Assembly (NCBI GenBank): GCA_002269645.1 | Contig: NIVC01000513.1 | Coordinates: 124,001 to 188,000, forward strand | Reading direction: 5' to 3' | Length of the DNA stretch: 64,000 nt | DNA from: Macrostomum lignano | Taxonomy: Eukaryota | Shown here: positions 3,898-63,190 of the stretch, in pieces | Layout of the letters: every line of letters starts with the position of its first letter | Numbering within the stretch: position 1 is the stretch's first letter | Notes under the pieces: generated by a model | What the model saw: the letters and a program-made list of their open reading frames with translations, nothing else | Told to the model about the DNA's origin: nothing | The model's database searches: none | Made by a program: the position numbers and the translations under genes

Positions 3898-4196
3898 TAC
3901 AAGTAAAATATTTCAAAAATATGAAATCTGCATTTTTAATGCACACCAACGAATACAAAGTTATATCGTGTACTAAATTCGTTGAAGGTATGCTTTGATC
4001 TTTGATCAAAACCGGCAGGTTTTCTGTCTCCGTGCAGTCTGCATGCGCAGAGTTCGCAGAGCGTAGGTTCAAAACTGAAGTACGAGTAACTACCAACAAA
4101 ACCTGTGTTAGCGAAAGTTTGAAAATATGCTCCTAGTTTGATTCACAAAGCAGTTACTGCGTTGAATTGCGTTGACAAAATACCAGCTACGAGCAT

Positions 4197-29500: not shown

Positions 29501-30219
29501 TGTCCGCACTGCTCGGCCAGCTGCAGACACGAGCGGCCCAGCCGGTCCAAGTGGTCCACGTCAGATCCTCCGTCCAGCAGCAGCCTGATGACTCTGAGCT
29601 GGCCGGCACGACACGCCCTGGACAGGGCGGTCCAACCCTCGCTGTCCTCAGCTTCCACTGAGGCGCCACGATGGAGAAGTGCCGTGACGAGCTCGTGGTG
29701 TCCCGCGCCGGCAGCCAGCATGAGCGCTGTTTCGTCGCTGCTTATCTTCCAGTCGACATCGGACACGCGAGTCAGCAGGGTAAGCGCCAAAGCCAGGTGA
29801 CCAAGCAAGATACAATGGCGCAGCAACAGACTCGTCTGTTGGTCGGTCAGGTACGCCAGCGTGCGGTCCAAGTCTGCATTGTCCCCAGCAACTGCATTTC
29901 TAGCCATGTTGGACAATGGATTATCGGTTTGGTCGAGCCACATGGGCCGAAGCTCGCGCTGTTGAATTTTGCGCAATTCATCAGCTGGTATCTCTTGCTG
30001 GTCTGCTGAGCTCTTAGCCAGGTAAATTATGTCAAGAATTTGTTCAATGTTTTCACCTGCCCAAGCTGCAGCCGGATGCTCAGTAGACGGTGTATCGTTG
30101 ATCATCCGTGGGCCTTTCGTATCACGATAGTACGAGCTAGCAATGTAGTGGCTGCAGATTTTATTGCCACACAAGCCAGGGAGCGCCAAGCCGGGCCAGA
30201 TTTTAACTAATTGCAGCAT
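26541..30219 (-). CDS. Ankyrin-repeat / Mab-21 (cGAS-like, cGLR) nucleotidyltransferase fusion, about 889 aa, join(30219..29396,29262..28919,28042..26541); start uncertain
   Basis: ANK repeats (ETALMLAAGAGH, GWTALSRACRAG, GRSCLQLAEQCG). GACAA|gtaatg joins catttctag|C in phase 2; ACAG|gtgatc joins gtattcag|GA in phase 1. NTase TGSYADG and DSDID, third acidic residue in RDCVH. Mab-21 C-lobe RVSFSFEEK, LLKF, LKTYNAKT, MPHFFMP. AATAAA follows the stop. Confidence 0.85.
28191..28421. mobile_element. hAT-type MITE in cGLR intron 2
   Basis: Ends CAGGGGTGTATTT and AGATCCGCCACTG; flanks ATTATGGC / CTTATGGC (7/8 TSD); internal GCGCCCC motifs. Confidence 0.6.
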
Positions 30220-30483
30220 TATAAAGGGGCGCAAGAAGAATGATACAGCTAATAAATGGAATAATAAACAGTGGAAAGCAACCAAGCGTGACAAAACAGC
30301 CACAGTCCTTCCAGACAGAGCGAGCGCACCAAAGACAGGCGACCAAACCCCGAGGAGCTTTCGATGCGCACATTGCTCTTATAACTTAAACCAAAGTAAA
30401 AACAACCTACACTGTAACACCAGCTAATCTAGCCTGGCGTGGACTGCACAATGCGCCATGCACTTGCACGCTCAGTGCTTTTC

Positions 30484-32132: not shown

Positions 32133-35100
32133 CTACTTTGTGTAGTACACTCGATAGTACAGCCACTTGGATCGCCATAGCGAGTAGGAATTGTCAAATT
32201 TCAGCAGGTACACACCTCTGCCAGGGTACTGGTGGCTGCCGCAGTACACCTCCTCGTGGCAGTCGCGCCGGAACACCGGGATGATCTCGTCAACCGCCTT
32301 GTCATCGTCAGGACGTCGCCGTTTTGATGCAGCTCCATCAGCGGGTTTGGAATCTGGCGATGGGTAAACAAGGACTCAGATGGGTCAAGCAGGACTTGCA
32401 GATGGGTCAAGCAGAACTCAGATGGGTCAAGCAGGACTTGCAGATGGGTCAAGCAGAACTCAGATGGGTCAAACAGGACTCAAATGGGTCAAGCAGAACT
32501 CAGATGGGTCAAGCAGGACTCAGATGGGTCAAGCAGGACTCAGATGGGTCAAGTAGTACTCAGATGGGTCAAGCATGACTTAGATGGGTCAAGCATGACT
32601 CAGATGGGTCAAGTAGTACTCAGATGGGTCAAGCAGGACTCACATGGGTCAAGCAGGACTCAGATGGGTCAAGCATGACTCAGATGGGTCAAGCAGGACT
32701 CAGATGGGTCAAGTAGTACTCACATGGGTCAAGCAGGACTCAGATGGGTCAAGCAGGACTCACATGGGTCAAGCAGGACTCAGATGGGTCAAGTAGTACT
32801 CAGATGGGTCAAGAAGGATTCAGATGGGTCAAGAAGGATTCAGATGGGCCAAGCAGGACTCAGATGGGTCAAGCAGGACTCAGATGGGTCAAGCAGGATT
32901 CAGATGGGTCAAGCAGGATTCAGATGGGTCAAGCAGGATTCAGATGGGTCAAGCAGGATTCAGATGGGTCAAGCATGACTCAGATGGGTCATTAGGATTC
33001 AGATGGGTCAAGCATGACTCAGATGGGTCAAGCAGGACTCAGATGGGTCAAGCATGACTCGAACAGGACAAATTGAAATCGGTTTGCTTGAAACATTTAA
33101 AAAGCAAAGTAGGTCACCCGAATCATTTTAGCAAATACCAATAGATGCCAACTCCGACCCACCTCCGTCAAGCTGTTGATGCTCAGCCTCGCCAGTCTCA
33201 TTATTGCCATCGTCTTTGGCCTCCTCTTCCTCCTCCTCATCTGAGCTCTCGCTGATGTGCACGGTGACGCGGTCAGAGGGCGAGATGGTCCACTCGAAGT
33301 ACACGCCGAACCCGATGTCGTAATGGTCAGTGGCGAATTCCCACACTATGCACGAGCCCTCCTCGTGGGTTGGCACGCGAACCTGAAAAAATAAACCATA
33401 GACATGCCCGGTTTGCACTACTTACAAGAGCTGGTGAGTAGTAGTATTAGCTAAGAATTTAACCGATACAAAACACAGGGACACAACACACATTGTCAAC
33501 TGAGTTGCCACATTCTCTGCAGTTTGCAATAATTCAACATGATTAAATATGCCATTTTGTAACAAATTATAAATATTAATAATTAAAGGATTAAAGGGTA
33601 TTACCAAGTACCGGCTGTGTCTAATGAATGAGCTTTCAGATCATCCAGCTAAATAATTGCCATTATTGCAAGACCAATTATCGAATATTTGTTAAATCAA
33701 ATGTAAGAGATTAAAGAAACTATTTATAGTTTAAAAAATTAACTTGTGAAAGTTATAAAATAATAAAAACGCTTGCTTAAAATCAGAGCAACTCATCTCT
33801 CCCTGATTGATACACACACTCTCTCTCTCGCTCTAATCTCCCCTCCCTCTCTAATTTAACTCCACTCAACTCGCTAAATCTATTCTCTAGTCTACTTTCC
33901 CATCTACTCAACCATCCTAACTCCACTATCTACTCATCTACACTATAATCTACTTTCCTATCTACTTATCTAGCCTCTAAAATGTACCTACCTACTCTTA
34001 TCTAATCTACCCTATTGTGCACTCTCCTACCTACTCCTCTACTCACAATCTACTTTCCTATCTACTTATCTACCCACAATCTACTCTCCTATCTACTCCT
34101 TTACCTCACAATCTACTCTCCCATCTACTACTCTACCCCCACAATCTACTTTCCTATCTACTCATTCTACCCTATAATCTACTCTCATATCTACTAATCT
34201 ACCCCACAATATACTCTCCTCTACCCCAAAATCTACTCTCCTATCTACACATCTAATCCACTGTCTCCAGCATCCTTACAGTGACAACCTCCCCAGGGCC
34301 AATCTTGAGCCTGGCATCGCTGTCAGCGGCCAGTTTAGCTTTGAACTGGGCGGCTGTCAGCTGCTTATCGCACCACATGCTTGGCGCGGCCATCAGGCTG
34401 TTTGTTGTTGCCGCTTCTCCGCTGGGCGACTGCGGCTGCAGCTCGGGCGACACTTTTGAAGTCGCCGCGTTGCCGTTGGTCAAAACCGGGGCCGGTTTGT
34501 CAGGCAAGGCTGCAATAAATTTATCATTTTTATTAAGCGCAAATTTTTCAGAAATTTTCCTAAAAAAACAGTTGAACACCCAAATTACTCTACTGTTAGT
34601 AAACCAAATTTAATTTAAAAAATTACGTAGAATTTTCACAAAGGAAAAAAGTAGCATTGCTAATCCGTTTAGAGCGTGCAAAGATTATTGACAACAAAAA
34701 TGAAGTGCATGATGTGCACCGCATTTAACACGCATGCGTTTCGGAAAGCGACACGTGAAAATAATATATTTGCTGAGTAGAAATAATAGAGACTTCTACT
34801 AGACTGTAGTACACTTCTAAGAAAAAATATACCTACTTAGACAATATTACATAGTCTACTACTTAATAAATAATCAACTGCAGGAATGTGGCATGATTAT
34901 AACAAAATTGACAATGTGGTTCATTGTTGTCGATCTCTGTTTTCGGCGCTAAACTACAGGATATATCATTTATAAAAGCAGTAATAACCTTTATTTGGGG
35001 TCCGAGTTTAAGGGATTTCAATCGGGACTTTATGAGGGATCTGCGATCGGGATTTTTAGGGATCTGCAATGATCGGGACTATTTAGGGATCTGCAATGAT

Positions 35101-38100
35101 CGGGACTATTTAGGGATCTGCAATGATCGGGACTATTTAGGGATCTGCAATGATCGGGACTTCTTAGGGATCTGCAATAATCGGGACTTCTTAGCAATCG
35201 GGACTATTTAGGGATCTGCGATTCGGACATCTGGGGAATGTAGAAGTGGGACTCATGTATTCGCAAAAGAAGAACATTGAAATACTACATTTTAAGGACT
35301 AAATTCGGGACTAAACTCGGGACTAAACTCGGGACTAAGCCTAGAGAAGAGCAGGCAGTCAGTCGGATTACCGTAGCCGTAGCCAGCGACCCAATCTTAA
35401 TGCAGCAGTGCCGGCTGTCGCGCAGAATCTCTTTCTTAAATTCGGCCGCATTGTTTCTCGTCCACATGCTGGCCGGAAGAATTTCCGGTCCAGCCTCTGC
35501 TTCATCATCTCCATCTTGTTGCAGCTGTTGCTGCAGCTGCTGATTGAAATCTTAATTAAATTGGATATTTTTCAGATGCGCAATACCAAAATACTGCTGA
35601 CCAATAGTACGAGAGTAGTAGCAGTAGTATAAACTGAATAATTTAATAAAATTACAAAAAAATAATAAAAAGTTGTCGCGATGCTAAACAAAATACTTGG
35701 CTTAAAAAGCAGTAAAAATTGATCTAAAAAAAAACAGAATTAAAATATTTTATATGCAACTTTTTTCAAACACTATAGATGTTGAATCCCAAAACTCAAA
35801 AGTCCCAGATCACTAAACTACAGATCCCTGATCCCAATACTCCAGAGTCCAGATCACTAAACTACAGATCCCTGATCCCAACACTCCAGAGTCCCAGATC
35901 ACTAAACTACAGATCCCTGATCCCAACACTCCAGAGTCCCAGATCACTAAACTACAGATCGCTGATCCCAACACTCCAGAGTCCCAGATCACTAAACTAC
36001 AGATCCCTGATCCCAATACTCCAGAGTCCCAGATCACTAAACTACAGATCCCTGATCCCAATACTCCAGAGTCCAGATCACTAAACTACAGATCCCTGAT
36101 CCCAACACTCCAGAGTCCCAGATCACTAAACTACAGATCCCTGATCCCAACACTCCAGAGTCCCAGATCACTAAACTACAGATCCCTGATCCCAATACTC
36201 CAGAGTCCAGATCACTAAACTACAGATCCCTGATCCCAACACTCCAGAGTCCCAGATCACTAAACTACAGATCCCTGATCCCAACACTCCAGAGTCCCAG
36301 ATCACTAAACTACAGATCCCTGATCCCAATACTCCAGAGTCCAGATCACTAAACTACAGATCCCTGATCCCAACACTCCAGAGTCCCAGATCACTAAACT
36401 ACAGATCCCTGATCCCAACACTCCAGAGTCCCAGATCACTAAACTACAGATCCCTGATCCCAATACTCCAGAGTCCAGATCACTAAACTACAGATCCCTG
36501 ATCCCAACACTCCAGAGTCCCAGATCACTAAACTACAGATCCCTGATCATAACACTCCAGAGTCCCAGATCACTAAACTACAGATCCCTGATCCCAATAC
36601 TCCAGAGTCCAGATCACTAAACTACAGATCCCTGATCCCAATACTCCAGAGTCCAGATCACTAAACTACAGATCCCTGATCCCAATACTCCAGAGTCCCA
36701 GATCACTAAACTGCAGATCCCTGATCCCAATACTCCAGAGTCCCAGATCACTAAACTACAGATCCCTGATCCCAACACTCCAGAGTCCCACATCACTAAA
36801 CTACAGATCCCTGATCCCAATACTCCAGAGTCCCAGATCACTAAACTACAGATCCCTGATCCCAACACTCCAGAGTCCCAGATCACTAAACTACAGATCC
36901 CTGATCCCAATACTCCAGAGTCCCAGATCACTAAACTGCAGATCCCTGATCCCAATACTCCAGAGTCCCAGATCACTAAACTACAGATCCCTTATCCCAA
37001 CACTCCAGAGTCCCACATCACTAAACTACAGATCCCTGATCCCAACACTTCACAGTCCCAGATCACTAAACTACAGATCCCTGATCCCAATACTCCAGAG
37101 TCCCAGATCACTAAACTACAGATCCCTGATCCCAATACTCCAGAGTCCCAGATCACTAAACTACAGATCCCTGATCCCAACACTCCAGAGTCCCAGATCA
37201 CTAAACTACAGATCCCTGATCCCAATACTCCAGAGTCCCAGATCACTAAACTACAGATCCCTGATCCCAATACTCCAGAGTCCCAGATCACTAAACTACA
37301 GATCCCTGATCCCAACACTCCAGAGTCCCAGATCACTAAACTACAGATCCCTGATCCCAATACTCCAGAGTCCCAGATCACTAAACTGCAGATCCCTGAT
37401 CCCAATACTCCAGATTCCCAGATCACTAAACTACAGATCCCTTATCCCAACACTCCAGAGTCCCACATCACTAAACTACAGATCCCTGATCCCAACACTT
37501 CACAGTCCCAGATCACTAAACTACAGATCCCTGATCCCAACACTCCAGAGTCCCAGATCACTAAACTACAGATCCCTGATCCCAATACTCCAGAGTCCCA
37601 GATCACTAAACTACAGATCCCTGATCCCAACACTCCAGAGTCCCAGATCACTAAACTACAGATCCCTGATCCCAATACTCCAGAGTCCAGATCACTAAAC
37701 TACAGATCCCTGATCCCAATACTCCAGAGTCCCAGATCACTAAACTACAGATCCCTGATCCCAACACTCCAGAGTCCCAGATCACTAAACTACAGATCCC
37801 TGATCCCAATACTCCAGAGTCCCAGATCACTAAACTACAGATCCCTGATCCCAATACTCCAGAGTCCCAGATCACTAAACTACAGATCCCTGATCCCAAT
37901 ACTCCAGATCCCTGACCCCAATACTGCAGAGTCCCGAAACCCTAATACGAGGTGTATTCAAAAAGTTCTTTTCGGTGCCCTACAAAACTGAACACAAAAC
38001 AACTGGAACTATGAAAACACTGTTAGATTGCTTAACATGATTCTGTCACTCAACATATTCACCGCCAATGTCTTTGCACTTCTGCCAGCGATTTACCAGG

Positions 38101-41100
38101 CCTCTGATTCCGGAACTCACACCACTCGCGTCCGTTTGGCGAACAGCTTGATTGCATGCAGCTTCGATGTGCTCGACGCTGTCAAATCGAATGCCCCGAA
38201 GGTGCTTCTTCACAGATGGAAATAAGAAGAAGTCGCACGGCGACAAATCAGGCGAATAGGGTGGATGTTGGAGCACTTCCCAGCCCCATTTGCTCAGGAG
38301 TTCCACGACGTTGTGCTTGCGATGTGCTGGCGCATTGTCGTGCAGCAGGATCACGCCAGATTCCAGCAGACCAGGGCGCTTCTTTCGTATTGCTGGGCGC
38401 AGCTTCTCCTGCAGAATCCACTTGTAGTAGTCCCCATTGACGGTGGTTCCTTGTGGGACTGCCCAGTTCAGCAGGATTCCTTGGGAATCAAAAAACATGA
38501 CGTGCATGATCTTTATCGCGCCCTGCTTCCTGATGGCCTTCTGAGGTCTTGGAGAATGTGCTGGAAGCCATTCGGCAGACTGGGCCTTTGTCTCAGGATC
38601 CCAGCTGTAAACCCACGTCTCGTCTCCAGCAACAATTCTTGATAGAAAATCCTCCCCTTCTCGATGGAACCGACGCAGGTGGCTGCTTGAAGCCAGAGTT
38701 CGCTGCATCTTTTGCTCACCTGTCAGCAGGTGTGGCACCCACTTGCAGAACTTTTTCTGTAGGAGAAGACGCTCAGTCAGAATAGTGTGGACGCTTCCTA
38801 CTGACACACCAACGTCTTCTGCCAACTCTTCGCAAGTCCGTCGCCGATCATCATCCAGGAGCTCTTGCACTTTCTTCACAGCAGTCTCTTTGGTTGCAGC
38901 CATCGGCCTTCCAGAGCGGCCATTGTCCTCAACGCTCTCTCTTCCCTCAGCGAACAGCCGGTACCATTTTCGAACTGTCTGCTCAGTTGGTGCACAGTTG
39001 CCAAGCACTTGCTGAAGCTCCCTAAACATATCCGGTGGCTTTTTTCCTTGCAGAAACTGAAACTTCATCAAGCTTCGAACGTCTTGCTTTGAAAATGATT
39101 CAGTCATGGCCAAGAAATTGAGTGGCAGCTGATAGAAATGTTCGCTGCTCTAACATAGTTGCAAACTGAGACTTAAAACCCTAGGAACGTTTAGGCCATA
39201 GACATAACTTGGTAAAATCGCTAAAATTCTGTTTACAACGCTTTCTAAAAATAAATGCCAAAGGACCGAAAAGAACTTTTTGAATAAACCTCGTAAAACA
39301 AAAGCAACAAATCCCCATAAAATAAATCCCGTCTCACCCTCAGCTGCAGCCGCCTCAACAGTTGCAGACTCATTCGTAGAATTCTGTTGACTTTGCTTTG
39401 GCTGCTGCTGCAACAGTTTTGCTTGCTCTTCTTCTTGTTGAATTTTCAACTGCTGCTGATAGACCTGAGTCATGTACTGCTGGAAGTGCTGCTCCTGCAG
39501 CTGAGCGATCAGCTCTGCCTGCTTGTTGGCGTCGCCTGGATGCTGCTCGGCGGCGTATTGGCGAAATTGGACAGCCGTCTGCTGGTTCAGCGCCGCCCGA
39601 ATCTGAGCTCTGCTCGGATATGGATGGTGAGAACGGGGGGGGGGAGATGAGTGCCTGAGGCGCTATGCTGAATCCATCCGCACTTGATGGGGCTGTAGCC
39701 TAGTCATACTATACATGCCTCTTGAAAGAAAGCTAAGCAAAAGAAACGTAATTTTGGGTAAACGGAAGGAGCAACTCTAACCATATTTTTAAGGCTAAAT
39801 GCCTCGCCACCTAAGTAGTATGGTTAGAGCGTCGGAGTTATGATTGAAAGGTTGGGGGTTCGAATCCCACTACCACTAGGAACAATTTGTGACCTTGAGC
39901 AAGATGGGTCCCAGCATTAGCTGGGGTAATTGAGGGTGTTTGTGGCGACCCCCCAGCAATAGCTGCGGCTGAGCTGTCGGTTGCACATCTGAGCATTAAA
40001 GGCAGGTATAATCAACTAACTATTAATTATTATTAAACCATTAGGGCCAATCAGTGCCAATAACATCTCAGGAGTCTGCAGAATGGGCAGTACTGCCGCC
40101 AGGGTGGCCCACACCATTCCTGCAGTACATTATATTACCCGTTGAAAACATAACGACTCAAATGCGACGGAGGCGTGATTTTCAGAATCGTAAAAGAGTC
40201 TCACGCAACTCAGTGATTCTAAAGCGACTCTTTGACGAGATTTTTCAATAAGCGAATTGCATTGCTAGTTCAGATGCTAAAAATAAGATGGAGCTGTCAC
40301 TCACTCCTGCTGATGACGCCGCGAGTCATCTCTGTTGGTTACAGGACCAGACACTGAGTTTGTCTTCTGATTGGCCAAGTTCTGCTTGGCTGCCGCTTCG
40401 GCTTGCTTACGCTGCTGCTGCTGCATCTGCTCCTGCTCTTGCTGCTTCTGGCGTTGAATTTCGCGTCTGAGAATTTTTTAAATAGGGCGCATTGTTGCAT
40501 GTCAGTTTCTTTTATTTTTATGATTCTAAAGATTAATCTCATGCTTCAACCTATCGATCTCTCACTCCAATCTATCAATCACACACTCCAACCTATCAAT
40601 CTCACACTCCAATCTATCAATCACACACTCCAATCTAACAATCTCGCACTCCAATCTATCAATCACACACTCCAATCCATCAATCACACACTCCAATCTA
40701 TCAATCTCACATCCCAATCTATCAATCTCGCACTCAAATCTATCAATCTCGCACTCCAATCTATCAATCTCGCACTCCAATCTATCAATCTCACACTCCA
40801 ATCTATCAATCTCACACTCCAATCTATCAATCTCGCACTCCAATCTATCAATCTCGCACTCCAATCTATCAATCTCGCACTGCAATCTATCAATCTCACA
40901 CTCCAATCTATCAATCTCACACTCGTCTATCAATCTCAGACTCCAATCTATAAATCTCGCATACTCTAATCTGCAAATCCCATATCTCCATGTCAATCTC
41001 ATACTACAACCCATCAATCGCTCACTCTTTGGCCTCGGCCTCCTCCTTAATCTTATTCTCCCGATCCCGTTTCTCATTGAGATGCGCCTCCAGGTAGGGC

Positions 41101-44100
41101 GCCAGCAGAGGACAGGCTCGGTCAAGAATTTCCACGAATTTCTCCTGAGCCCGTTCTCGACTCAGGTCTCCGAGCGACTGCCAGGTAGCCCTGGTTAAGA
41201 GACATGCGTGAATAATTTATTTATTGGGATAATTTTCCTAACTCGCATAGTCTACTCGCAACAGTTAATTAATTAGCCAAGTTTACTTTCTATCGCTGCC
41301 AACCACATCCAGCCACCCGACGCCAGGCGAAGCATCAGACTTGTAGGGGCCGTGGGCCACCTGCTTGCAGTGAGCCGCTAACTGAAGCCGGTCCTGGTAG
41401 CTCAGGTGAAATGCTTTGCCTTCTTTCTCTGGGAATTTCAATGAGATTGGCGCATGAATGTAGCTTAAGTGAGTATTTTAGCAAATAGTTAAATGACAGT
41501 GTCATTCAGCCTGATCAACAATAATATCAGATTTTTTATACATTTTAAGTTTGTTTAACTTGTTTTTTAGATAAAATTTCTATTGATGGTTTAGCAAACA
41601 TTAGGGAAAATGGAATTGATTTATTTTGTTATGAAATTTATATAAAATGTAAAAAATTTTCACACAAAAATTCTGGTAAAAAATTCAGATGTTAGGAGTG
41701 TAAGGAAAACCCTATACTTTAGTCATTGGGTGACTCTGCTAGTTAGCATTCTCCCCCCACATGGATCTTGGCTCAAGATGGGATATTTCTGACAATATTG
41801 CCTAGTTAAATAGTTGTATGATAGGCAATCATAGTTTATACTCAGGACCATTGCAAAGTAGTGGACCTTCTTGATATTTTTTTTACCCAAGTGCCCTGTA
41901 TGGCAATAAATGTATACTTTGCAGTAAGACACTGTCTCTGTAGCTAGTAAGCCAAACAGAACACAGAGTCATCCTCTGAAGACCTAAAAATAGCAGCAAC
42001 CTGGCTTAGCAAATCATTGGCATGACAACATAGCTAAAAGGGCAAAGCTAGCTGCAACCAATTAGTAAAAGGGTAAACAACAAAATACAAAGGCAGTAAA
42101 ACTAGGAAGATTGGTTGAAACTATTTGCAAATGCTTAAGCCAAAGCCAATTATACCTTTGCTTAACCATGGGTCATATACAACTGAAGGATAGGATACCT
42201 TTGCACAAAAACAAATGCAGCCCAGGCCATAGTATAAAGAAGTCATATAAAGTCTAATTTAATAAAAATAAAGCCCCTATTAGAAGAAGTATTCATTTGT
42301 GCATCTTCATCAAGTCTTTGTCTGACATGCTTAAGAAAATTTGGCAGGTGCAAGTGCACATAGATGTGCACATGTGTAGTTGCACACATCCTATAGATGC
42401 ATATGCGTACATGAGCTACCATGTGCACAAAAGGTATCCAGACAGAATCTTGTTGGCTTTGCTTTCTGAGAGTTTGACATACTCTAGAAATTTAAAGCAT
42501 TGCCATCATTTTTATAATGTCTATGGCCCAACTTCTGCCTGGAATTTTAACCCTGATATGCAAAATGGACTCATGCTATTCATCCTTTTATTTTGAAAGC
42601 TTTGTTTTCAATCCATGGATTTGTCACCCCAAGTTGTCACAAAATGGCAAGCTATTCCTTGGATCTCAAGAAGCATGTTGCTACCAACTTGACTTCTGGA
42701 ATGAGCATGCGAATGTGTGCTGAGAAGTACTCAGTAGGGAAGAGCACTGTCGGTGATTGGGAGAAGCTGCTGGATTCTGGCGACAGCCTGGAACCAAAGG
42801 AGAAATTGGGACGGCCACGGACAATCCGGACACCAGACTTCATGGCCAACCTCGAAGCCAAGCAGGCAGAAGACCCAACAAAGACAATGAGACAAATTGC
42901 CCGAGAGGAAGGAGTGCATATGAGCAATGTACCAGACTACATTATATGTATACATATACTCAGTAGCAAAGGGTACCTATATGTAAATTTTATATAGTAG
43001 TTTTTGCATCAAAAAAGTATTTGCATTTGAAGTGGCAATGAAGTTTTTGACTTATTTAATGGCTAAAAATAAAAAAATTCTGCTATATATACATGTATTT
43101 TGTTCCTCATGAGCAGTGAATTAGAAGTAAAAATTGAGTGTTAGTCATGCTAAACTTTGTTTTTTTGAATTTCAATTTTGGAAAATTTTGATTTTGATTT
43201 TGGAAAGTAAATGAATTTTGATTTTGATTTTGTTAGAAAATTCACTTGTAGAACATTTCTAATATATAGATTTATACATGTACATTTATATATATAAACA
43301 GTGTTGGGCACCATTAATGAAAATCTTAACTTCCATTAATAGCAAAAGCGTTAGCGTAAAACAAAAAATCTTAACTTTTTAACTCCTAATTTCGTTAAGT
43401 TAACTGAAAGTTAACTGATAATCATTAATAAGCGTTAATCCATTAACGTTAACACAGAAATACAGAAATCTTGCACATTTTTTTCCGAATCAGACTTTGT
43501 ATTGCACGTCTTTGCTATTCCATCTTTTTAGCAAAACACAGAGGTCATCTAAGCAATTTGAAAGCTTAAAAGGGTAATAAATAATCATTTTAAAAACTTG
43601 CATGCATAATACTACTAAAAGTAAAGCATATGGTAAAAAAGTAACTTATTTTATTTGAAACTTAAAAGCTAATAACAAGAAATTCATAATTTAATATGCA
43701 TAGGAAGGTTATTTCAGTACCATTAGCAGGCGCAGCAAAAAGTTGCGAAAGATTGGGACAGAAGTGAATCAAAGCAATTGATGCTCACGCGCAAGAAATA
43801 AAGTTTCACACTATTTTAATTCATTATTTTAAAGTTTATTTGTAAGAAGTTGTTAATTACATGTACGTCTGTATGATCATCGTCATAAATAAAGAGATTA
43901 TATTTAGGCATTTAGGTAAGCTCAAATACGTTCGTAATGTTTAAACTTCTTGTAAGGCTTCTATTTTTTGTTCCTTCTTTGCATCTTTGGTTATTGACAT
44001 AGACACTACCGTTAATGATGAATTTATCATTAATTAACAAAATTTTTAACACAAATTTGTTAATCCGTTAGTTCAAAAAAAATCTTAACGACAGTCCGTT

Positions 44101-44964
44101 AACATTAATTAAAAATCTTAATGCTTATTAATGCTTATTAACAGATTAACACTTATTAACGGACTGGTGCCCAACACTGTATATAAATAAAGTTTTATTA
44201 TAGGACAAGAAAGCTTGATTTATAATTTAATGTGTAATACTAGAAGAAAGATTAGATCTAAAATAGCATTTTTAAAATACTTATGCTTACTTATTTAATA
44301 GACTAGGCTAAAACAGAATTTGAATTTGTAAATATTTTTAAATTGAATATGACTATGTCTAAGATTAAAAAGAGAACATTTAGTAGCACCTATAACAATA
44401 TTAAGTAGAGGGAAATACTTAAATATTAAAGACCTATAAAGGTATAGCATAGGGCCTAATAAGTAACCTTTATCAATTGGTAGGCCTAACACTATAAACT
44501 TTCATAAGTAGGCATAAAATCATAGAACCCTACTACTTAGACACTATACTTAGTGACTAAGGATTTTCAGTAATTTACTAAGTAATTTTTTTGCAATAGG
44601 AAAGCCATTTTATATATTAATAAATAGGCCTAGCATTCTAACTTTCAAATTCAAAATTGTATCTTCAAATTAAATATTAGATGCAATTTGCATCATAAGT
44701 AATAGCAAGAAAAATCTAGGCTAGGCTTAGTTTTAATGCAATAGAAATGTAATGCAATATAGTAGTAAGTGGTAGTAATGTAGTAGTAGGTTGGGCCTAA
44801 GTAAAGCAAAAAAAACATTTAAATCTATTTTAGGTAGTAGAATATTGTATTAAAAACTGTAAATAGACTAAAATATATAATCAAAATCAACTACACTCAC
44901 GACTCACCTTTAATGAATCTGACGCAAAGTAAATACAACTCATCCAGGTTGAATGAGCTCTCAC
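32133..44964 (-). CDS. ACBD3: Acyl-CoA-binding domain protein 3 (GCP60); exons 44964-44908, 41428-41287, 41190-41026, 40466-40305, 39609-39338, [35550-35372 or 34509-34280], 33382-33163, 32353-32133; first exon not located
   Basis: ACB ([24 protein letters not shown]...[10 protein letters not shown]...W), Q domain ([24 protein letters not shown]...[11 protein letters not shown]), GOLD ([28 protein letters not shown]; [35 protein letters not shown]). All splice phases are compatible. Confidence 0.95.
32367..33060. repeat. 20-bp tandem repeat (GACTCAGATGGGTCAAGCAG)n in the last ACBD3 intron
   Basis: Directly visible. Confidence 0.95.
33880..34258. repeat. Degenerate CT/CTA-rich repeat (ACAATCTACTCTCCTATCTACT-like)
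   Basis: Directly visible low-complexity array. Confidence 0.8.
35030..35220. repeat. 27-bp tandem repeat (GATCGGGACTATTTAGGGATCTGCAAT)n
   Basis: Directly visible, lying between the two alternative ACBD3 exons. Confidence 0.9.
35800..37935. repeat. 45-bp (and 44-bp variant) satellite CCCAGATCACTAAACTACAGATCCCTGATCCCAA[C/T]ACTCCAGAGT
   Basis: Directly visible, about 2.1 kb, highly homogeneous. Confidence 0.97.
37948..39293 (-). mobile_element. Full-length mariner transposon (irritans/Hsmar2-like ends)
   Basis: 29-bp TIRs CGAGGTGTATTCAAAAAGTTCTTTTCGGT with one mismatch, TA on both flanks, single intact ORF. Confidence 0.95.
38046..39107 (-). CDS. Mariner transposase, about 353 aa
   Basis: WVPHLL, GDETW, HDNAPAH and [10 protein letters not shown] motifs (mariner DDD triad); no stops. 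Confidence 0.95.
   Translation of the reverse strand: MTESFSKQDVRSLMKFQFLQGKKPPDMFRELQQVLGNCAPTEQTVRKWYRLFAEGRESVEDNGRSGRPMAATKETAVKKVQELLDDDRRRTCEELAEDVGVSVGSVHTILTERLLLQKKFCKWVPHLLTGEQKMQRTLASSSHLRRFHREGEDFLSRIVAGDETWVYSWDPETKAQSAEWLPAHSPRPQKAIRKQGAIKIMHVMFFDSQGILLNWAVPQGTTVNGDYYKWILQEKLRPAIRKKRPGLLESGVILLHDNAPAHRKHNVVELLSKWGWEVLQHPPYSPDLSPCDFFLFPSVKKHLRGIRFDSVEHIEAACNQAVRQTDASGVSSGIRGLVNRWQKCKDIGGEYVE
39806..40035 (+). mobile_element. tRNA-derived SINE
   Basis: A-box-like TAGTATGGTTAG, B box GGTTCGAATCC (39857-39867), SINE-body motif TTGTGACCTTGAGCAAG, (TTA)n-like tail. Confidence 0.65.
40545..40950. repeat. 21-bp tandem repeat (CTCCAATCTATCAATCTC[A/G]CA)n
   Basis: Directly visible; the 7-aa-periodic ORFs are artefacts of it. 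Confidence 0.94.
42644..42931 (+). mobile_element. IS630/Tc1-like transposase N-terminal HTH fragment
   Basis: [12 protein letters not shown]...[12 protein letters not shown]...GRPRTI...[15 protein letters not shown]; catalytic domain absent. Confidence 0.7.
43299..44179. mobile_element. hAT-family non-autonomous element, 881 bp
   Basis: Perfect 15-bp TIR CAGTGTTGGGCACCA / TGGTGCCCAACACTG, perfect 8-bp TSD TATATAAA, subterminal TTAAC/TTAAT repeats. Confidence 0.9.
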
Positions 44965-45734
44965 CTAAATAATGCATTTTTTGAAAAATGATAACTACCT
45001 GTTTAAATTACTATATTTTGCGAATACAACATAGGCCTATAATGGGGGCCTGGTTCGAAATGAAAATTGTTTCTGATAGTAAATCGACCGAGTATGCCGG
45101 TAGTCAGATGTACCTACTTAGGATTTTGGATTTTATAAGTTTTTTAGTCTATTTTTTAATTATTTAACTTCCACACAATGCGCAAGTTGAATTTTCCACG
45201 CAAGCGCTTCATTTCGAAGAATCGGGTAGTACTTAAGTATAGTTTTATTCCATTGAAATAAGCAGTATTAAAATATACAGTTGAAATATTTTGAATGCAG
45301 CATGTGGCAAAATTTCTAAAAGTTTTTTCAAGTTTGTTATAATAAACTAACATTACACGTTTAAGCAAGGCAGAAAGGAACCGTGCGATCGAACTTCTGT
45401 TTCGTACGGGAGTCTACAGCAGAGCACTATAGTAAGCGGGCCGTTGCGTAGATCGGTAGAGCTGGTCTTTGCGGCGAATGTAATAGCTACACATGTAAAG
45501 CACATAAATCAAGCCGCTCACCCCGACACCGACAAGCTGACAAATAAAACAATTGCATGTACTTGTACATGTACTTGTATACATGTACTTGCATACATGA
45601 AATTATAGAATCCTAATTCCCCCAACAGAAATCCATAGACAGTCTGAGAATCCCTTATGGAAAATTATAGGAAGCTGTACATCTTTACTTGTGTGTCGTC
45701 TCTATCTGTCTGTCTATCATCTAAATTACTCTGT

Positions 45735-57358: not shown

Positions 57359-60300
57359 TGGCAAAAATACCGAAGACAACCCACTGGAGCGCATCCCGAC
57401 CAATAATCGCACTATTATCGGAGGCGACTTCAACGCCCACGGCGCTTGGGATTACCACATGGAAGAGGACCAGCGAGGACAGCGCGTCGAGGAATGGGCA
57501 ACCAGAAATGGGCTGGCTATCTGCAACAGCAATGCACATACCAGGACTAGCCCCGCCACCGGCAAACGGTCAACCCCGGACATTACCTGCGTTTCCGGCT
57601 CCTTGGCCAAAACGGTCACACGCAGCTGGAGGACTGGACCAGACTGCGGTAGCGACCACCTCCCGATCCTGTTCAACGCCGCGGCGCCCCGTCCAGTGCA
57701 TAAACGAGGCCCCCCGCTGGAACTATCGCAAAGCGAACTGGACAACCTACAAGTCGGAACTCCAGGCCAACCATTGCGCCCAACAGCCCAACCCTATTGG
57801 GTCAGCGGCGAACGCCATGACCATTGACCAGGAGGCCGAAGCGCTCAGCAGCATGATCCTGAAGGCAGCACATAAGAGCATCCCGAGAGGCAGCACGGCG
57901 GGACGTCGGGCCCCATTCTAGTCCGAAGCCTGCTCAAATGCTTGCGCGGAAACCCAAGCTGCCCGGTCCCAAGCTGAGGAACTTCAGACCCAAGAGGCCA
58001 TTACAGCCTTCAACAGAGCCCGTCACCAAGCCGCCAAGGTCATTAGAAAACAGCGCCGCGATCACCTCGAACAGCGCACGGAAGTGCTCGATGCCAACTC
58101 TGACCTTTTTAAGCTGCTCAGATCTATGCGCGGCGAAGCGCCCACGGGACGCGACCCTGCGGCAATTAGCAGTCCGGCCTCCGGCAGCCGCCCGGCGCGC
58201 ACCTGCAACTCCGATAAAGAAAAGGCAAATCTCTTCTGCCAGCTTTATGCCGAGGTTAGCAGGGTTGAACGACGGGCGAATGACGCAGCCATCCGCTACG
58301 AAGCCAACAGCGGCCTCCGGCAGTCCGAAGAGGAGGCCCAAGACCCGACTGCGGCCGACTTCATGCTGGCGAACTCCGCACCGCGCTCCGTAAATTGAAG
58401 TCCGGTAAGGCGGCCGGCCCGGATGGCGTCAGCAACGAAATGCTTAAGCACCTACCAGCGGAGATTGACGAACGCCTGCTGCACCTCATCAACCGCAGCT
58501 GGAAAGACGGCTCCACGCCGAACAGCTGGCGCCGAGCGGTCATCATCCCACCAGCGGAGATTGACGAACGCCTGCTGCACCTCATCAACCGCAGCTGGAA
58601 AGACGGCTCCACGCCGAACAAGCGGTCATCATCCCAGTGCCAGCCCAGAGCAGCTATCGACCGGTCGCGCTTACGAGCTGCGTCGCCAAGTGCGCCGAAC
58701 GTATAGTGCTAGCCAGACTCAACTGGACGCTAGAAACCAAGAGCCTCCTGACGCCCTGCCAGGCTGGCTTCCGCCGACACCGCGGCTGCGACGAGCAGAT
58801 AGCCAGGATATGTCAGGATATTTTCGACGGCCTTGAATCGCAGCCTCCCATCCGCAGCATTCTTGCCCTGTTAGACTTCTGTCGCGCCTACGACAGGGTT
58901 TGGAGAGCAGCGCTTTATGCCAAGATGCTCTGCATGGGGATCAACCGCCGCATCATCAGATGGGTCCGCGGTTTCCTCTGCCAACACAGGGCAGCGGTGA
59001 AGTGGAACGCTGCCACCAGCCGCGAGCGCTGCTTCAGGGAAGGACTGCCACAGGGCAGCGTCCTCGCACCTACGCTTTGGAACTGCTACATTAACGACCT
59101 ACCGGAAGCCATCTCGCGGGCAGCCCCTCAATCAGCAGTCAGCCTCTACGCAGATGACTCGGCCATCCTCTGCTCAGCCACCACTCTTCAGCGCTGCACA
59201 ATCAATCTTCAACCGGCCCTTGACGCAGCCGCTGAATGGTGCCGCCGGTGGAAGGTCGAACTTAGCCCCAACAAGTGCTGTTTCACGACCTTTTCGCTGG
59301 CACCCAACGAGACCAATGGGAAAGTTCGCCCGCACCTCAGCATCTGCGGCGAGCCTCTGCAGTTTGAGCTCCACCCGACTTTCCTCGGCGTCAAACTTGA
59401 TGGCCAGCTAACGTTCCAACATCATGTGGCGGATATCCGCCGCCGCATGGCAGTCCGCCGACGGCCCCTCGCCGCCCTGGCGACTCGTAGCGGTGGCGCC
59501 TCCTTCCACGTCCTCCGCACTGCCTACATCGCCACTGTGCGTGCTATTGCCGACTACGCATGCGGAATCTGGGGTGCCTTTGCAGTGCCGAGCAGCAGGC
59601 TTCTCATCGAACGGCAACAGTTCTGCTGCGCCAGGATCATCTCGGGGTGCATTAAGCCCACAAACGTCAGGGCGCTCCTCGCGGCCGCAGACCTGCCGCC
59701 CATCGGACACCTGATCCTGGAGAGAGCGGCGACCTTGCGGGAACGGGCTCTGAGGCTGCCCGGGGAGGTCCCGGTGCACCAGACTGCCGCTAGACCCTGC
59801 CTGCCCCGCCTGAAATCCCGTGCTCACGAGGCGTGGCTACGGGAGCAACACCCGGTGGATGACCAGGTCCTGCTGGAGAGCGACTACCGCAGGCCTTTCC
59901 GTGGTTGCTGGAGGCGCGCCGCACTGGAGCTCGGCATCAACGCCCTCGAGCCAGCGGGGATGCGCGCCCCCTTCCCGATGCCCGAGCCGCCATGGCAGTC
60001 ACCCAGCGAAGTCAGCTTCGACACCAGCCTGCAGGTCACCTGCGGCCGCAAAGTGCCGGACAGCATCAGACGGGAGAGAGCCATCAATGCCCTGGAATCC
60101 AGACCTCAACACGATATCGTCATCTGGACTGACGGCAGCGCCACGGACGGCTGCCGGGACGGCCATGGCGCGGCCGTCCTGCACACCCTCCTCTGGGGCG
60201 AAGTACACACGACAGCCGCTGGCTCCGTCTGCAGCAGCACGACGGCGGAGCTAGCGGCTATAGCTCTAGGCATCCGCCGCTGCCTACAGCTCCAGCAACC

Positions 60301-60941
60301 ACACGGGGGCAGCATCGACATTCTCACGGACAGCATGGCGGGCATCCTCACCCTGCAGCGCAGGCCAGCTGACCAACGCGAGCCCATGGGACAGCTGGTG
60401 TGGAGCCTGCTCAGTCAAGAAGCTCGCCCGGTCCGCATTACCTGGGTGCCGGCCCACGTCGGCGTTGATGGCAACAAAAGAGCCGACAAGGCGGCGAACC
60501 GGGCTTCGGACCTGACGCAGGACCAGCCCATCGCCTTCGAAGCCGCCAGGGCTGCCATCAAACGAGCCAGGCGACACCTCGATCTCAAGCTCTTGAACCG
60601 TAGCTCGCCCTGGAAGCGCTACGGCGGCCTGACTCGTGGCGAGACGGTGGCGGTTTGCCAATTGAGGGCCGGCTGCAGCACAGCCTGCGCGGCCACCCGC
60701 TACTGTATCGGCCTTACCGAGACTCCACTCTGTCCGGACTGCGGAGACGAAGACACAGAAGAGCACCTCCTGCAGCAGTGTCCACGCGGAGACTCCGCCC
60801 GCCTTGCTCACCCTCTCGACCTCAACGACGCGGGCGGAATCTGCCGGTATCTGAGGATGATGGGGCGGCCTGCAGGTCGCCCTCCCCCCCAGCCGCCGGA
60901 CAGCGGCGACGCGGGGGCTGCGTAGAAGAAAAAGAAGAAGA
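57359..60941 (+). mobile_element. LINE A: 5'-truncated Ingi/I-group non-LTR retrotransposon (partial APE, RT, RNase H, zinc knuckle)
   Basis: GGDFNAH...SDHLPI; RT with GLPQGSVLAP and YADD; RNase H WTDGS...TDS...WVPAHVG; CPDC..EHLLQQC; (GAA)n tail; 12-bp TSD AGCAGCACAACA at 57347-57358 and 60942-60953. Stops and frameshifts present. Confidence 0.92.
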
Positions 60942-60958
60942 AGCAGCACAACAGCACC

Positions 60959-63190
60959 ATGGCCGCGGTCATGGGCATCGCCTCTACCTGGCGACCCGGA
61001 TGGTTGGACAGCTACGACTGTGCCAAGATGCCCAACCCTAGACAACCGCCTCCCCTGGTACACGACTACATCACAACTGCGGCGCAAGGCGATGATCACT
61101 TCCCGGTGTCTAGACATGTCATCATTGTCATCAGCCTCTTTTTCTGGCTCAGTTTGCTCGCCCAGCTTGCAGGCGACATTGAACTAAACCCTGGGCCCGA
61201 CTGCGACTGCTGCGGTTGCCCCATCAGAAGAGGCTTGAACTTCCTCTCCTGCCAGTCCAGTTAGTGCCCCACCCGCTGCCACAAGCAACCATCTTGCAGC
61301 GGCATCTGCTGATACCAACAGAACCAACACTTGCACTGCCAACATTACAGCAGATCAGAGCGCACCCCCTGCAACTCGCCAACCGCGGAGGCAGCTACCC
61401 CTGGCAACTGCAGTGCCTGCTCGGGCCCAATCCACTCTGGCACCACTCCGCTACGGTGCGAAACCGCCGGCTGCACGTCAACCTGCCACCATACAACCAA
61501 ATGCAGCAGCATCCCGCGCTTCAAGGGCTGCCCTCGCTGGCGCTGCCCCATCTACACCCCACCTGCGGTGAGATCCCTGGCTGGCCGCCCGATCGTGGAT
61601 AGGCGCCCCGCGGCTGCCAGTCACCCCCACCCGCCGATTCAAGACTCCGGCTGCTGCAGCGGGTGCTATTTTCTCTTCCGCTCTAACCACCACCCCATCG
61701 CCTGCCGTCAGTGTAATGCTAAGTTCCACAAGAAATGTACCCGTCTTACCAGGCTTGCAGCCAACCTGGCTGCCACCCAGGGTCACTGGACCTGCCTGGC
61801 CTGCACCTCAACAAAAGTGGCACACGAGACGGCAGTCACTAACCAGACCACAACTCAGGCCCAGACTTCCACCCAGTGCGCCTGCCTCCGCACCACAACC
61901 CTCCAGGAACCCCTGCTGATTCTTCAGTGGAATGCGGACAGCATCTCAACCTGGGTCACCGAGCTGGCAAACTGCATCAACTCTCTCAAACCAGACCTGA
62001 TTCTGATCCAGGAGTCCAAACTGCTCCTGCAGGACCCCACCCCTTGCCTCCATGGTTACGCCGCAGTTCGGGTAGACCGCAAGCAGCCGGATGGTGGAGG
62101 TGGGCTGCTCACATTCATCCGGGACTGTCTCGCATTCGAACGCAAGCTGGTGACGACCTGCGAGCCAATCGAAACCTGCCGCGTACGTATCTTCCTAAGC
62201 TCTAAGAAATCCTTGGATGTGGATAACGTATACGTCCTGCCTGTCTATGGCGGCAAAGAACACAGCGAGGTACTCTGGTCAACCCTCCCAACAAACGCCA
62301 ACCTGCTCGCCGGCAACTTCAATGCCCACTCGGCCATCTGGGACCAGACCCAACTGGCCAATGGTTGTGGCAACACCCTGCTGGACTGGGCCACTGAACA
62401 TGGCTTGATGGTCATGAATAACGGCTCACCAACCAGAATTAACCGCGGTACAGGTGGCAAGAGCACGCCAGATGTATCGCTTTGCCGCAACGCTTGGCAT
62501 CACTGCACCTCTTGGAGTACCCTCGACGACCTCAGCTCCGACCACCTCCCAATCGCCATCCACCTCCGCTGCACCACCAAGAATCTCCATTGTCAGACCA
62601 GGACTTTCTAGAGAAGCACCGGGGTAGACTGGATAGCATTTGCCCAGGACGTCGACTCCCAAGTCGCCACCTTCAAAAGCACCGGCGTCTCATTCAAACA
62701 ACGAGCCAGCCGCCTCACGGAGGCCATCATAGCATCGGCATACTGCCATGTGGGGAAAAAGTCCTCCAACAACCAGCCCGGCCCTGGCTCTCCCAGGAGG
62801 CTTGCGAGGCCATCCGCAAGCGCAATTGCCTCAGCAGAGACGTCGGTAACCGCCGTGCCAAATGGCTCCAAGCCTGTGCAGACGCCACTACACTCTCCTG
62901 CAAGAGCAAGGAATAGAGCTGGCGGGAATTCCTGTGCGACACCGACCTATTCCAAGATGCCACCAAGGCCTGGCACCTTGTCCGCAGCCTTAGTGGTACC
63001 CCAGGCGATAACACCACTAATGAGGCCCTGTCCATCAGAGACAAAACCTACTGCAACAATGCGAGTAAGGCTGAGATCTTCATCAAGCACTACAAGGCGG
63101 TCAACCGTCTCCACTTCAACAAAGCTGACTGCGCCATCAACTGCTCTGCTAAGTCTGCCGTATGCGCCTACGACACCAACCAGGAGGCTG
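60959..63190 (+). mobile_element. LINE B: 5' part of an Ingi-like element (2A motif, PHD fingers, APE endonuclease), RT missing
   Basis: GDIELNPGP at 61172-61198; PHD-like C-x2-C...H-x2-C...W-x-C-x2-C; APE motifs QWNADS, IQESK, GGGLL, GNFNAH, TPDVS, SDHLPI. Broken frames; ends at a tandem repeat. Confidence 0.88.

What the first reader, a model, noticed from the sequence alone, without database searches (positions are those of the whole stretch)
34280..35550. Duplicated, mutually exclusive exons in ACBD3 at the start of the GOLD domain
Seen: exon A (35550-35372: ...[35 protein letters not shown]|) and exon B (34509-34280: ...[36 protein letters not shown]|) both encode the SMW...FK...IG...T segment that precedes VRVP. 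Both start in phase 1 and end in phase 0, so joining A to B shifts the frame. Inference: two isoforms differing in the linker and first GOLD strands, the region that in mammals mediates Golgi-targeting partner binding and picornavirus 3A docking. I know of no report of this.
Basis: partly seen in the sequence, partly recalled or inferred. Interest (0 to 1): 0.7.

Follow-up and report, generated by a model that had tools for sequence, protein, structure and literature searches.

The report
Ancient either-or exon pair in ACBD3
The flatworm Golgi adaptor gene ACBD3 has two alternative versions of one exon, a pair also found in molluscs, annelids and ribbon worms, so its GOLD domain can be made with two different edges; this kind of splicing is ordinary, but this case seems undescribed and public flatworm gene models get it wrong.

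Summary
The window is Macrostomum lignano (a flatworm) and holds a nine-exon ACBD3/GCP60 gene on the minus strand. Exon A (35550-35372, 179 nt) and exon B (34509-34280, 230 nt) have canonical splice sites. Both start in phase 1, end in phase 0, and are 2 mod 3 in length. Either one alone gives a full ACBP+GOLD protein (476 or 493 aa). Both together, or neither, gives an early stop.

They are not a local oddity. A-type (…[10 protein letters not shown]|VRVP) and B-type (…IKIGSGETVT|VRVP) exons lie in the same order in gastropod, annelid and nemertean loci, and the phases were checked in Haliotis. RefSeq isoforms of nine mollusc species carry one type or the other, never both. Vertebrates, amphioxus, arthropods, nematodes and Lingula show only B-type.

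The exon encodes the first strand, a helix, a second strand and the first half of the GOLD edge strand. In human ACBD3 that strand pairs with picornavirus 3A.

No M. lignano transcript evidence was available, so use of both exons in this species is inferred. UniProt models of this gene join both exons through ad hoc sites and are probably wrong. I found no publication. Verdict: a real, ancient mutually exclusive exon pair, and a new member of a known kind.

The parts
44908..44977 (-). ACBD3 exon 1 (ATG at 44977; [23 protein letters not shown]; donor gtgagt)
   Evidence: tblastn with the N-terminus of P0001 gave 100% identity. The junction was checked.
41287..41428 (-). Exon 2, first part of the ACB domain
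   Evidence: Splice sites and reading frame. Pfam ACBP match.
41026..41190 (-). Exon 3, second part of the ACB domain
40305..40466 (-). Exon 4, charged linker
39338..39609 (-). Exon 5, the Q-rich region (homologous to the human PI4KB/TBC1D22-binding region); ends in phase 1
   Evidence: Alignment to orthologues.
35372..35550 (-). Alternative exon 6A (A-type, ...[12 protein letters not shown]); 179 nt; phase 1 to 0; residues 271-330 of the 476-aa isoform
   Evidence: A-type profile score 72 bits. dN/dS 0.18 against the paralogue's A exon.
34280..34509 (-). Alternative exon 6B (B-type, ...[10 protein letters not shown]); 230 nt; phase 1 to 0; residues 271-347 of the 493-aa isoform
   Evidence: B-type profile score 44 bits against 8.6 bits for the A-type profile.
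34435..34436 (-). Internal AG|CC site inside exon 6B (the exon part would start at 34435), used by UniProt model A0A1I8G6G1 to join A and a truncated B in frame; probably a prediction artefact
   Evidence: It sits in GC-rich coding sequence, with 3 T in the 20 nt upstream.
33163..33382 (-). Exon 7 (VRVPTHEEG...), constitutive GOLD core and start of the acidic loop
32133..32353 (-). Exon 8, C-terminal GOLD strands (…[16 protein letters not shown]) with stop TAG at 32133-32135
34510..35371 (-). 862-nt intron between 6A and 6B, long enough that steric exclusion does not apply

Best explanation
Exons 6A and 6B of M. lignano ACBD3 are the flatworm copy of an ancient tandem exon duplication. The spliceosome includes one of them per transcript.

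Each exon encodes the same structural module at the N-terminal end of the GOLD domain: a strand (SMWTR or SMWCD), a helix (..FK..I/L..), a strand (IKI or LKI), a hairpin, and the first half of the edge strand that continues as VRVP in exon 7.

Both exons are 2 mod 3. Transcripts with both or neither therefore hit an early stop and yield no GOLD domain. I infer that they are removed by nonsense-mediated decay.

The result is two ACBD3 isoforms of 476 and 493 aa. They share the ACB domain, the Q region and the GOLD core. They differ in the linker, the hairpin and the exposed edge strand: SLATAT versus GPGEVVT. In human numbering the type-specific changes fall at positions 400, 401 and 403.

I infer that this changes which ligand or membrane surface docks at that edge.

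Shown here: exon anatomy, frames, homology, conservation across phyla, either-or use in mollusc RefSeq models, and fold compatibility. Inferred: either-or use in M. lignano itself, decay of aberrant transcripts, and a functional difference.
For: Frames: A alone and B alone give full open reading frames. A+B or skipping gives premature stops. Both isoforms score as ACBP + GOLD_2.

Orthology:
- The same A then B then VRVP exon order occurs in Haliotis (A 134 nt, B 122 nt, both 2 mod 3, phase 1 to 0), Lymnaea, Lamellibrachia, Tubulanus and Dimorphilus.
- In a neighbour-joining tree all A exons of four phyla group together. All B exons group with the single exon of human, amphioxus, Daphnia and C. 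elegans.
- Profile typing agrees.

Either-or use: RefSeq X1/X2/X3 isoforms of Haliotis asinina, H. rubra, Littorina, Pomacea, Physella, Mytilus californianus, Biomphalaria, Aplysia and Pecten carry A or B, never both.

Selection: exon A against the A exon of the M. lignano paralogue gives dS 0.77, dN 0.14 and omega 0.18. All A-type invariant residues are kept.

Splice signals: both alternative exons have weaker pyrimidine tracts than the constitutive exons, 8-9 of 20 against 12-14 of 20. Exon A uses an AAG acceptor.

Structure:
- AlphaFold models of both isoform GOLD domains have mean pLDDT above 90 for each 10-residue block from 11 to 60, which covers most of the exon-encoded part. They show the same strand-helix-strand-strand layout.
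- The A model superposes on human ACBD3 GOLD 5LZ1 with TM 0.92 and rmsd 1.8 A.

The edge strand V402-P408 and R399 of human ACBD3 are the 3A-pairing strand and part of the membrane-binding site (PMC6695192).
Against: - No M. lignano RNA evidence could be reached. The exact 476- and 493-aa isoforms are not in the protein collection. Two further searches found no Macrostomum transcript-derived fragments.
- The only public models of this gene (UniProt A0A1I8G6G1, A0A1I8GSA4, A0A1I8HEC4) contain both exons.
- Exon B is unusually diverged. The otherwise near-invariant TR after SMW is CD, there is a two-residue insertion, and it scores only 44 bits against the B profile.
- M. lignano also has a separate A-only paralogue, which could make exon A of this gene dispensable.
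- No conserved competing RNA structure was found, so regulation is unexplained beyond the frame rule.
Confidence: 0.78

Rival explanations
1. Both exons are used together in one mRNA through non-canonical internal sites, as in the UniProt models. This would give a protein with a duplicated SMW...KIG segment.
For: A0A1I8G6G1 and A0A1I8GSA4 join 35372 to an internal acceptor at 34435 in frame. A0A1I8HEC4 reads exon A frame-shifted and leaves it at an internal donor after 35392 to enter full exon B. The Dimorphilus model P0074 likewise merges part of its A exon with B.
Against: - The sibling gene copies are 'rescued' by two different tricks, which is typical of gene predictors forced to keep a frame.
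- The internal acceptor lies in GC-rich coding sequence with 3 T in the 20 nt upstream.
- Mollusc B exons (122 nt in Haliotis) are too short to hold a comparable internal acceptor. No RefSeq isoform of nine species has both exons.
- The product would displace a strongly conserved A module from the fold it is built to complete.
Confidence: 0.1
2. Only one of the two exons is still functional in M. lignano. Either B is a decaying relic, or A is redundant because the A-only paralogue supplies that form. The gene would then make one isoform.
For: Exon B has lost the near-invariant TR and carries an insertion. The flatworm paralogue and the S. japonicum gene have lost B entirely, and all neodermatan GCP60 proteins seen are A-type. 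The A0A1I8HEC4 copy reads exon A out of frame, which may reflect a 1-nt deletion or an assembly error.
Against: - Both exons keep open frames (59 and 76 full codons), canonical AG/GT sites and exon-like GC of 0.53 and 0.61, against 0.36-0.46 in the three flanking introns.
- Exon A is under purifying selection.
- Exon B keeps the B-type C-terminal signature and models confidently into the fold.
Confidence: 0.12
3. The resemblance of A and B is chance, or a recent Macrostomum-specific duplication unrelated to other animals.
For: Within the window the two peptides share only about 29% identity over the core.
Against: Exon A scores 72 bits against a profile of non-Macrostomum A exons, and exon B scores 44 bits against the B profile. 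The tree separates types, not species. The same exon order is found in three other phyla.
Confidence: 0.01

Closest known systems
RefSeq 'Golgi resident protein GCP60-like' isoforms X1/X2/X3 of molluscs (for example Haliotis asinina XP_067681298.1 and XP_067681299.1; Aplysia, Biomphalaria, Pomacea, Littorina, Physella, Mytilus californianus, Pecten)
   Same: The same two exon types at the same position. The genomic loci checked (Haliotis, Lymnaea) have the same order, and the phases match in Haliotis. One type occurs per isoform.
   Different: - These are automatic annotations that no paper I found describes.
- The mollusc exons are short (122-134 nt) with little linker. The M. lignano exons carry long, unrelated 5' linker extensions, and its B exon is much more diverged.
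Human/mammalian ACBD3 (GCP60) GOLD domain (PDB 5LZ1, 5LZ3, 5LZ6, 5TDQ, 6HLN and others)
   Same: The same domain architecture and fold. The isoform-A model superposes on 5LZ1 with TM 0.92. The alternative exon corresponds roughly to human residues 367-404, including R399 and V402-T404 (plus the alignment).
   Different: Vertebrates show only the B-type sequence (GRGEVVT) in all hits examined. In amphioxus the B segment is fused to the next exon.
Classical frame-enforced mutually exclusive exon pairs (FGFR2 IIIb/IIIc, PKM exons 9/10, tropomyosin, SNAP25 5a/5b); recalled from general knowledge, not tested here
   Same: Tandem homologous exons with identical phases and lengths that are not multiples of three. 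Double inclusion or double skipping therefore breaks the frame. The swap replaces one structural module of a folded domain.
   Different: A different gene and clade. No regulatory factors or RNA structures are known or found here.
A-only, ACB-less GCP60 genes of flatworms (M. lignano PAA58780/PAA89512/PAA63949; Schistosoma, Taenia, Echinococcus proteins)
   Same: They carry the flatworm flavour of the A exon (AEFK.EIL...CCIKI.SLA[TS]AT|VRVP).
   Different: - They have no B exon. The intron to VRVP is 83 nt in L001, and the 6.5-kb intron in S. japonicum has no B-like hit.
- Most lack the ACB domain. The window gene keeps ACB, A and B.

Membership tests
ACBD3/GCP60 | N-terminal acyl-CoA-binding domain (PF00887) | tested here: met
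   Both spliced isoforms score 49.6 bits against a cutoff of 28.3, over residues 17-93.
ACBD3/GCP60 | C-terminal GOLD_2 domain (PF13897) with the ACBD3-type fold | tested here: met
   208 and 215 bits. PDB sequence hits to ACBD3 GOLD at E about 4e-66. The model superposes on 5LZ1 with TM 0.92.
ACBD3/GCP60 | Q-rich coiled-coil region between the two domains (the PI4KB/TBC1D22 site in human) | tested here: met
   Exon 5 aligns with the conserved ALNQQTA.QF.QYA.QQ.PG...LI.QLQEQH.QQY block of orthologues. Binding itself was not tested.
Mutually exclusive exon pair | Adjacent exons in one intron-exon cluster, homologous to each other | tested here: met
   The exons are 862 nt apart. Shuffle test: 9 of 5000 reach the observed score. 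Both match the exon profiles.
Mutually exclusive exon pair | Identical entry and exit phases, so that each alone keeps the frame | tested here: met
   Both run from phase 1 to phase 0. A-only and B-only reading frames are complete.
Mutually exclusive exon pair | Joint inclusion or joint skipping is non-productive | tested here: met
   Both exons are 2 mod 3. A+B stops at 34482-34480, and skipping stops within exon 7. Decay of such transcripts was not tested.
Mutually exclusive exon pair | Mature mRNAs of this organism contain one or the other, never both | not testable with these tools
   No M. lignano transcript data could be reached. It is met in the RefSeq models of nine mollusc species.
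Mutually exclusive exon pair | Both copies conserved across species (evidence of function) | tested here: met
   A and B exons are present in Mollusca, Annelida, Nemertea and Platyhelminthes. Omega is 0.18 for A against the paralogue. B conservation within Macrostomum could not be tested.

The most novel reading that the evidence does not exclude
The A/B switch is a spiralian-wide, more than 500-million-year-old device. It toggles the exposed GOLD edge strand and hairpin of ACBD3 between two endogenous docking modes, for a beta-strand-donating partner or a membrane surface. This is the same surface that picornavirus 3A proteins exploit in mammals.

In flatworms the two modes are being partitioned between genes: an A-only, ACB-less gene alongside an A/B gene whose B exon is evolving fast. 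If so, the pair would point to an as yet unidentified cellular ligand class for that edge.
Probability: 0.3. Interest if true: 0.65.

Novelty: new member of a known kind. Interest (0 to 1): 0.45.

Why it matters
1. It corrects the gene model. The public M. lignano ACBD3 proteins (A0A1I8G6G1, A0A1I8GSA4, A0A1I8HEC4) almost certainly describe proteins that do not exist. The gene should be annotated with a 476-aa isoform and a 493-aa isoform.

2. It is an evolutionary marker. The A-type exon was found in four spiralian phyla. It was absent from every non-spiralian ACBD3 protein examined, and from the one brachiopod locus (Lingula) and the one amphioxus locus I inspected.

3. It bears on ACBD3 function. 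The swapped module includes the edge strand and hairpin that form the viral 3A docking site and part of the membrane-binding site in human ACBD3. The cellular ligand of that surface is poorly defined. A deeply conserved natural two-state variant of that surface offers a comparative handle on what it normally binds.

The kind of feature, mutually exclusive exons enforced by reading frame, is well known, so this is not a conceptual novelty.

Tried and rejected
- **Insect origin.** My first guess, from AT-rich introns and a mariner element, was wrong. The best hits are M. lignano.

- **Transcript evidence for M. lignano.**
  - Exact look-up of both isoforms found neither in the collection.
  - A chimeric ex5-A-B-ex7 query against the 90% clusters found nothing new. 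That search oddly failed to return even P0001 and P0002, so its negatives are weak.
  - The same query against the 1.84-billion representatives gave only P0002 and paralogue models.

- **Competing RNA structures (docking/selector).** I searched 33300-35760 for inverted repeats. Only three weak pairs appeared, at 74-83% complementarity. Rejected as evidence.

- **Gene conversion or an RNA element in exon A.** A run of identical third-codon positions against the paralogue looked striking. Similar runs occur in exon 8, and similarity does not extend into the introns. I make no special claim.

- **Orthology of the A-only paralogue with neodermatan GCP60.** BLAST identities to the window gene and to the paralogue are equal, so this is unresolved.

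- **Loci that could not be fetched.** Mytilus edulis, Owenia and Lineus.

- **Literature.** Searches combining ACBD3 or GCP60 with mutually exclusive exons, alternative splicing or Macrostomum found nothing relevant.
Full report
**What is at the coordinates.**
- Read on the minus strand, 35550-35372 and 34509-34280 are two open exons with canonical splice sites: aag|AT…ACG|gtaatc and cag|CC…ACT|gtaagg.
- I rebuilt the whole gene. Its exons are 44977-44908, 41428-41287, 41190-41026, 40466-40305, 39609-39338, then A or B, then 33382-33163 and 32353-32133.
- The exon ending at 39338 leaves one base over. A (179 nt) and B (230 nt) both complete that codon and end on a codon boundary. The next exon begins VRVPTHEEG in phase 0.
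- With A alone the product is 476 aa. With B alone it is 493 aa.
- With both, a TGA appears nine codons into B (34482-34480). With neither, the frame breaks and stops 18 codons into exon 7.
- Both isoforms score as ACBP (PF00887) plus GOLD_2 (PF13897).

**Whose gene it is.** The best protein hits are Macrostomum lignano, a free-living flatworm. The next best are GCP60/ACBD3 of molluscs, nemerteans, brachiopods and vertebrates. The three M. lignano entries are instructive:
- A0A1I8G6G1 (and its twin A0A1I8GSA4) contains all of exon A. It is joined in frame to an internal AG inside exon B, so the exon part starts at 34435.
- A0A1I8HEC4, from a sibling copy, reads exon A out of frame. It leaves exon A at an internal GT after 35392 and enters the complete exon B.
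- PAA58780 (P0035), a paralogue about 60% identical, joins an A-type exon directly to VRVPTHEEG.

The two models that contain both exons get there by different ad hoc routes. That is what gene predictors do when they meet an either-or exon pair.

**The pair is ancient.**
- Aligning orthologues showed two sharply different versions of the segment before VRVP. The 'A-type' ends …[CS]KEN[VI][10 protein letters not shown]. The 'B-type' ends …KDKDSVIK[IV]GSGETVT, with GRGEVVT in chordates and GHGETVT in arthropods and nematodes.
- The window's exon A is A-type: 72 bits against an A profile built without Macrostomum, and 41 bits against the B profile.
- Its exon B is B-type: 44 bits against 8.6 bits.
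- I fetched genomic loci. Both exons lie in the order A, B, VRVP exon in Haliotis asinina, Lymnaea stagnalis, the annelids Lamellibrachia and Dimorphilus, and the nemertean Tubulanus.
- GT donors follow every A exon and the B exons of all but Dimorphilus, where the B hit stops short of the exon end. Phase-1 acceptors were confirmed exactly in Haliotis, where A is 134 nt and B is 122 nt, both 2 mod 3.
- A neighbour-joining tree of the exon peptides separates types, not species. All A exons of four phyla group together. All B exons group with the single exon of human, amphioxus, Daphnia and C. elegans.
- The duplication therefore predates the split of molluscs, annelids, nemerteans and flatworms, and B is the ancestral form.
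- Lingula has only B. In amphioxus the B segment is fused to the next exon.

**Either-or use.**
- The 90%-identity clusters hide isoforms, so I listed cluster members and typed them.
- In Haliotis asinina, H. rubra, Littorina, Pomacea, Physella, Mytilus californianus, Biomphalaria, Aplysia and Pecten, RefSeq annotates isoforms of one gene that carry A or B.
- None of the 36 proteins examined carries both.
- This is the best available evidence that the pair is spliced in a mutually exclusive way.
- For M. lignano itself I could reach no transcript evidence.

**State of the two exons in M. lignano.**
- Exon A is very well kept. All residues invariant among A exons are present.
- Against the A exon of the paralogue, dS is 0.77, dN is 0.14 and omega is 0.18.
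- Exon B is intact but fast-evolving. The near-invariant TR after SMW is CD, and two residues are inserted. It keeps the B-type end [10 protein letters not shown].
- Both have exon-like GC (0.53 and 0.61) against 0.36-0.46 in the three flanking introns.
- Both have weaker pyrimidine tracts (8-9 of 20) than the constitutive exons (12-14 of 20). Exon A uses an AAG acceptor. These are features usual for regulated exons.
- The 862-nt intron between them rules out steric exclusion. No convincing competing RNA structure was found.
- The frame rule is the only enforcing mechanism I can point to.

**What the exon encodes.**
- AlphaFold models of both isoform GOLD domains are confident across the exon-encoded part, with mean pLDDT above 90 for each 10-residue block from 11 to 60. 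Both give strand (SMWTR or SMWCDKQLT), helix, strand (CIKI or RLKI), hairpin, then a strand that runs across the exon junction (ATAT|VRVP or EVVT|VRVP).
- The A model superposes on the human ACBD3 GOLD crystal structure 5LZ1 with TM 0.92 and rmsd 1.8 A.
- Horova et al. 2019 (PMC6695192) report that a beta strand of enterovirus and kobuvirus 3A pairs with the ACBD3 strand V402-P408. They also report that R399, L514, W515 and R516 form a membrane-binding site.
- With the human sequence …GRGEVVTVRVP, I infer this numbering: R399 G400 E401 V402 V403 T404 | V405 R406 V407 P408.
- The exon boundary therefore falls inside that strand, and R399 lies in the alternative exon.
- The consistent A/B differences sit at positions 400 (G to L), 401 (E to A) and 403 (V to A). 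Others lie in the preceding loop (KDKDS against CKEN) and just before SMW (AAA against MPA).
- PI4KB and TBC1D22 bind the Q region, which both isoforms share (PMC3622926).
- My mechanistic reading is that the switch alters what docks on the GOLD edge or hairpin, whether a partner or a membrane, and leaves kinase recruitment untouched. This last step is inference.

**Flatworm context.**
- M. lignano has a second gene family (PAA58780, PAA89512, PAA63949) with only the A exon. An 83-nt intron separates it from the VRVP exon.
- All neodermatan proteins seen (Schistosoma, Trichobilharzia, Taenia, Echinococcus, Anoplocephala, Sparganum, Schistocephalus) are A-type. All but one are listed without the ACB domain; the exon fragment P0134 has no Pfam entry on record.
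- The S. japonicum locus has no detectable B exon in the 6.5-kb intron after A.
- Whether the Macrostomum paralogue is the orthologue of the neodermatan gene is unresolved.

**Novelty and verdict.**
- Full-text searches combining ACBD3 or GCP60 with mutually exclusive exons, alternative splicing or Macrostomum returned nothing relevant.
- The pair is implicit in RefSeq isoform annotation of molluscs, and mutually exclusive exons enforced by frame are a textbook mechanism.
- I therefore rate it a new member of a known kind: real, deeply conserved, mis-annotated in M. lignano, and of moderate interest because of where it sits in the GOLD domain.
- The main open point is direct junction evidence in M. 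lignano.

Noticed in passing
window 38049-39149 (-): An intact 367-aa Mos1/mariner-like transposase ORF (PF01359, PF17906, PF13358) lies inside the ACBD3 intron between exon 5 and exon 6A, in the same orientation as the gene.
   Followed up: partly
window 35786-37912; 35021-35194; 35296-35338; 33926-34220; 32359-33060: Tandem arrays crowd the alternative exons. A 45-bp unit repeated 47 times ends about 235 nt upstream of the exon 6A acceptor. 27-bp and 12-bp arrays lie in the A-B intron. A 32/65-bp array starts about 60 nt after the exon 6B donor. A 20-bp unit repeated 35 times ends 6 nt before the last-exon acceptor. Any effect on splicing is unknown.
   Followed up: no
UniProt A0A1I8G6G1, A0A1I8GSA4, A0A1I8HEC4 (P0001, P0145, P0002): Public M. 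lignano ACBD3 models include both alternative exons through an internal acceptor (34435), or through a frame-shifted exon A plus an internal donor (after 35392). A0A1I8HEC4 also skips the acidic loop. They look like mis-annotations. The frame shift in the sibling copy may be an assembly indel or a real lesion.
   Followed up: partly
L001 11305-11421 and 11505-; L009 10305-10430 and 16993-: M. lignano has a second ACBD3-like gene family with an A-type exon only. S. japonicum GCP60 is likewise A-only and starts without an ACB domain. This suggests B and ACB were lost in one flatworm lineage or paralogue.
   Followed up: partly
L008 5260-5373; L007 25372-25485: The A exons of Dimorphilus (…RRRATHTFKVPSLSSAT) and Tubulanus (…KTGDSVIKVGSLSTAT) are much more diverged than those of molluscs. 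The Dimorphilus protein model P0074 splices part of its A exon onto B. This may mean the A exon is decaying in some lineages, or it may be another annotation artefact.
   Followed up: partly
window 35372-35478 versus L001 11315-11421: Seventeen consecutive codons of exon 6A have identical third positions in the paralogue, although dS elsewhere is about 1. Similar runs occur in exon 8, and similarity stops at the exon borders. Possible causes are codon bias, patchy conversion or exonic splicing signals. Not resolved.
   Followed up: partly
window 58637-60925 (+), 61331-62611 (+), 18258-19316 (+): Retroelement ORFs lie in a 62% GC block: reverse transcriptase plus RNase H, then an endonuclease/exonuclease/phosphatase-type ORF. 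A further RT fragment lies at 18258-19316.
   Followed up: partly
window 29392-30303 (-), 26541-28079 (-), 4108-5823 (-): Other coding-looking ORFs were seen: an ankyrin-repeat protein, a weak Mab-21-like match, and a long coiled-coil repeat ORF in a strongly GC-skewed stretch. No gene models were built.
   Followed up: no
window 40535-41027: A 21/63-bp tandem array lies in the intron between exons 3 and 4, starting directly after the exon 3 donor.
   Followed up: no
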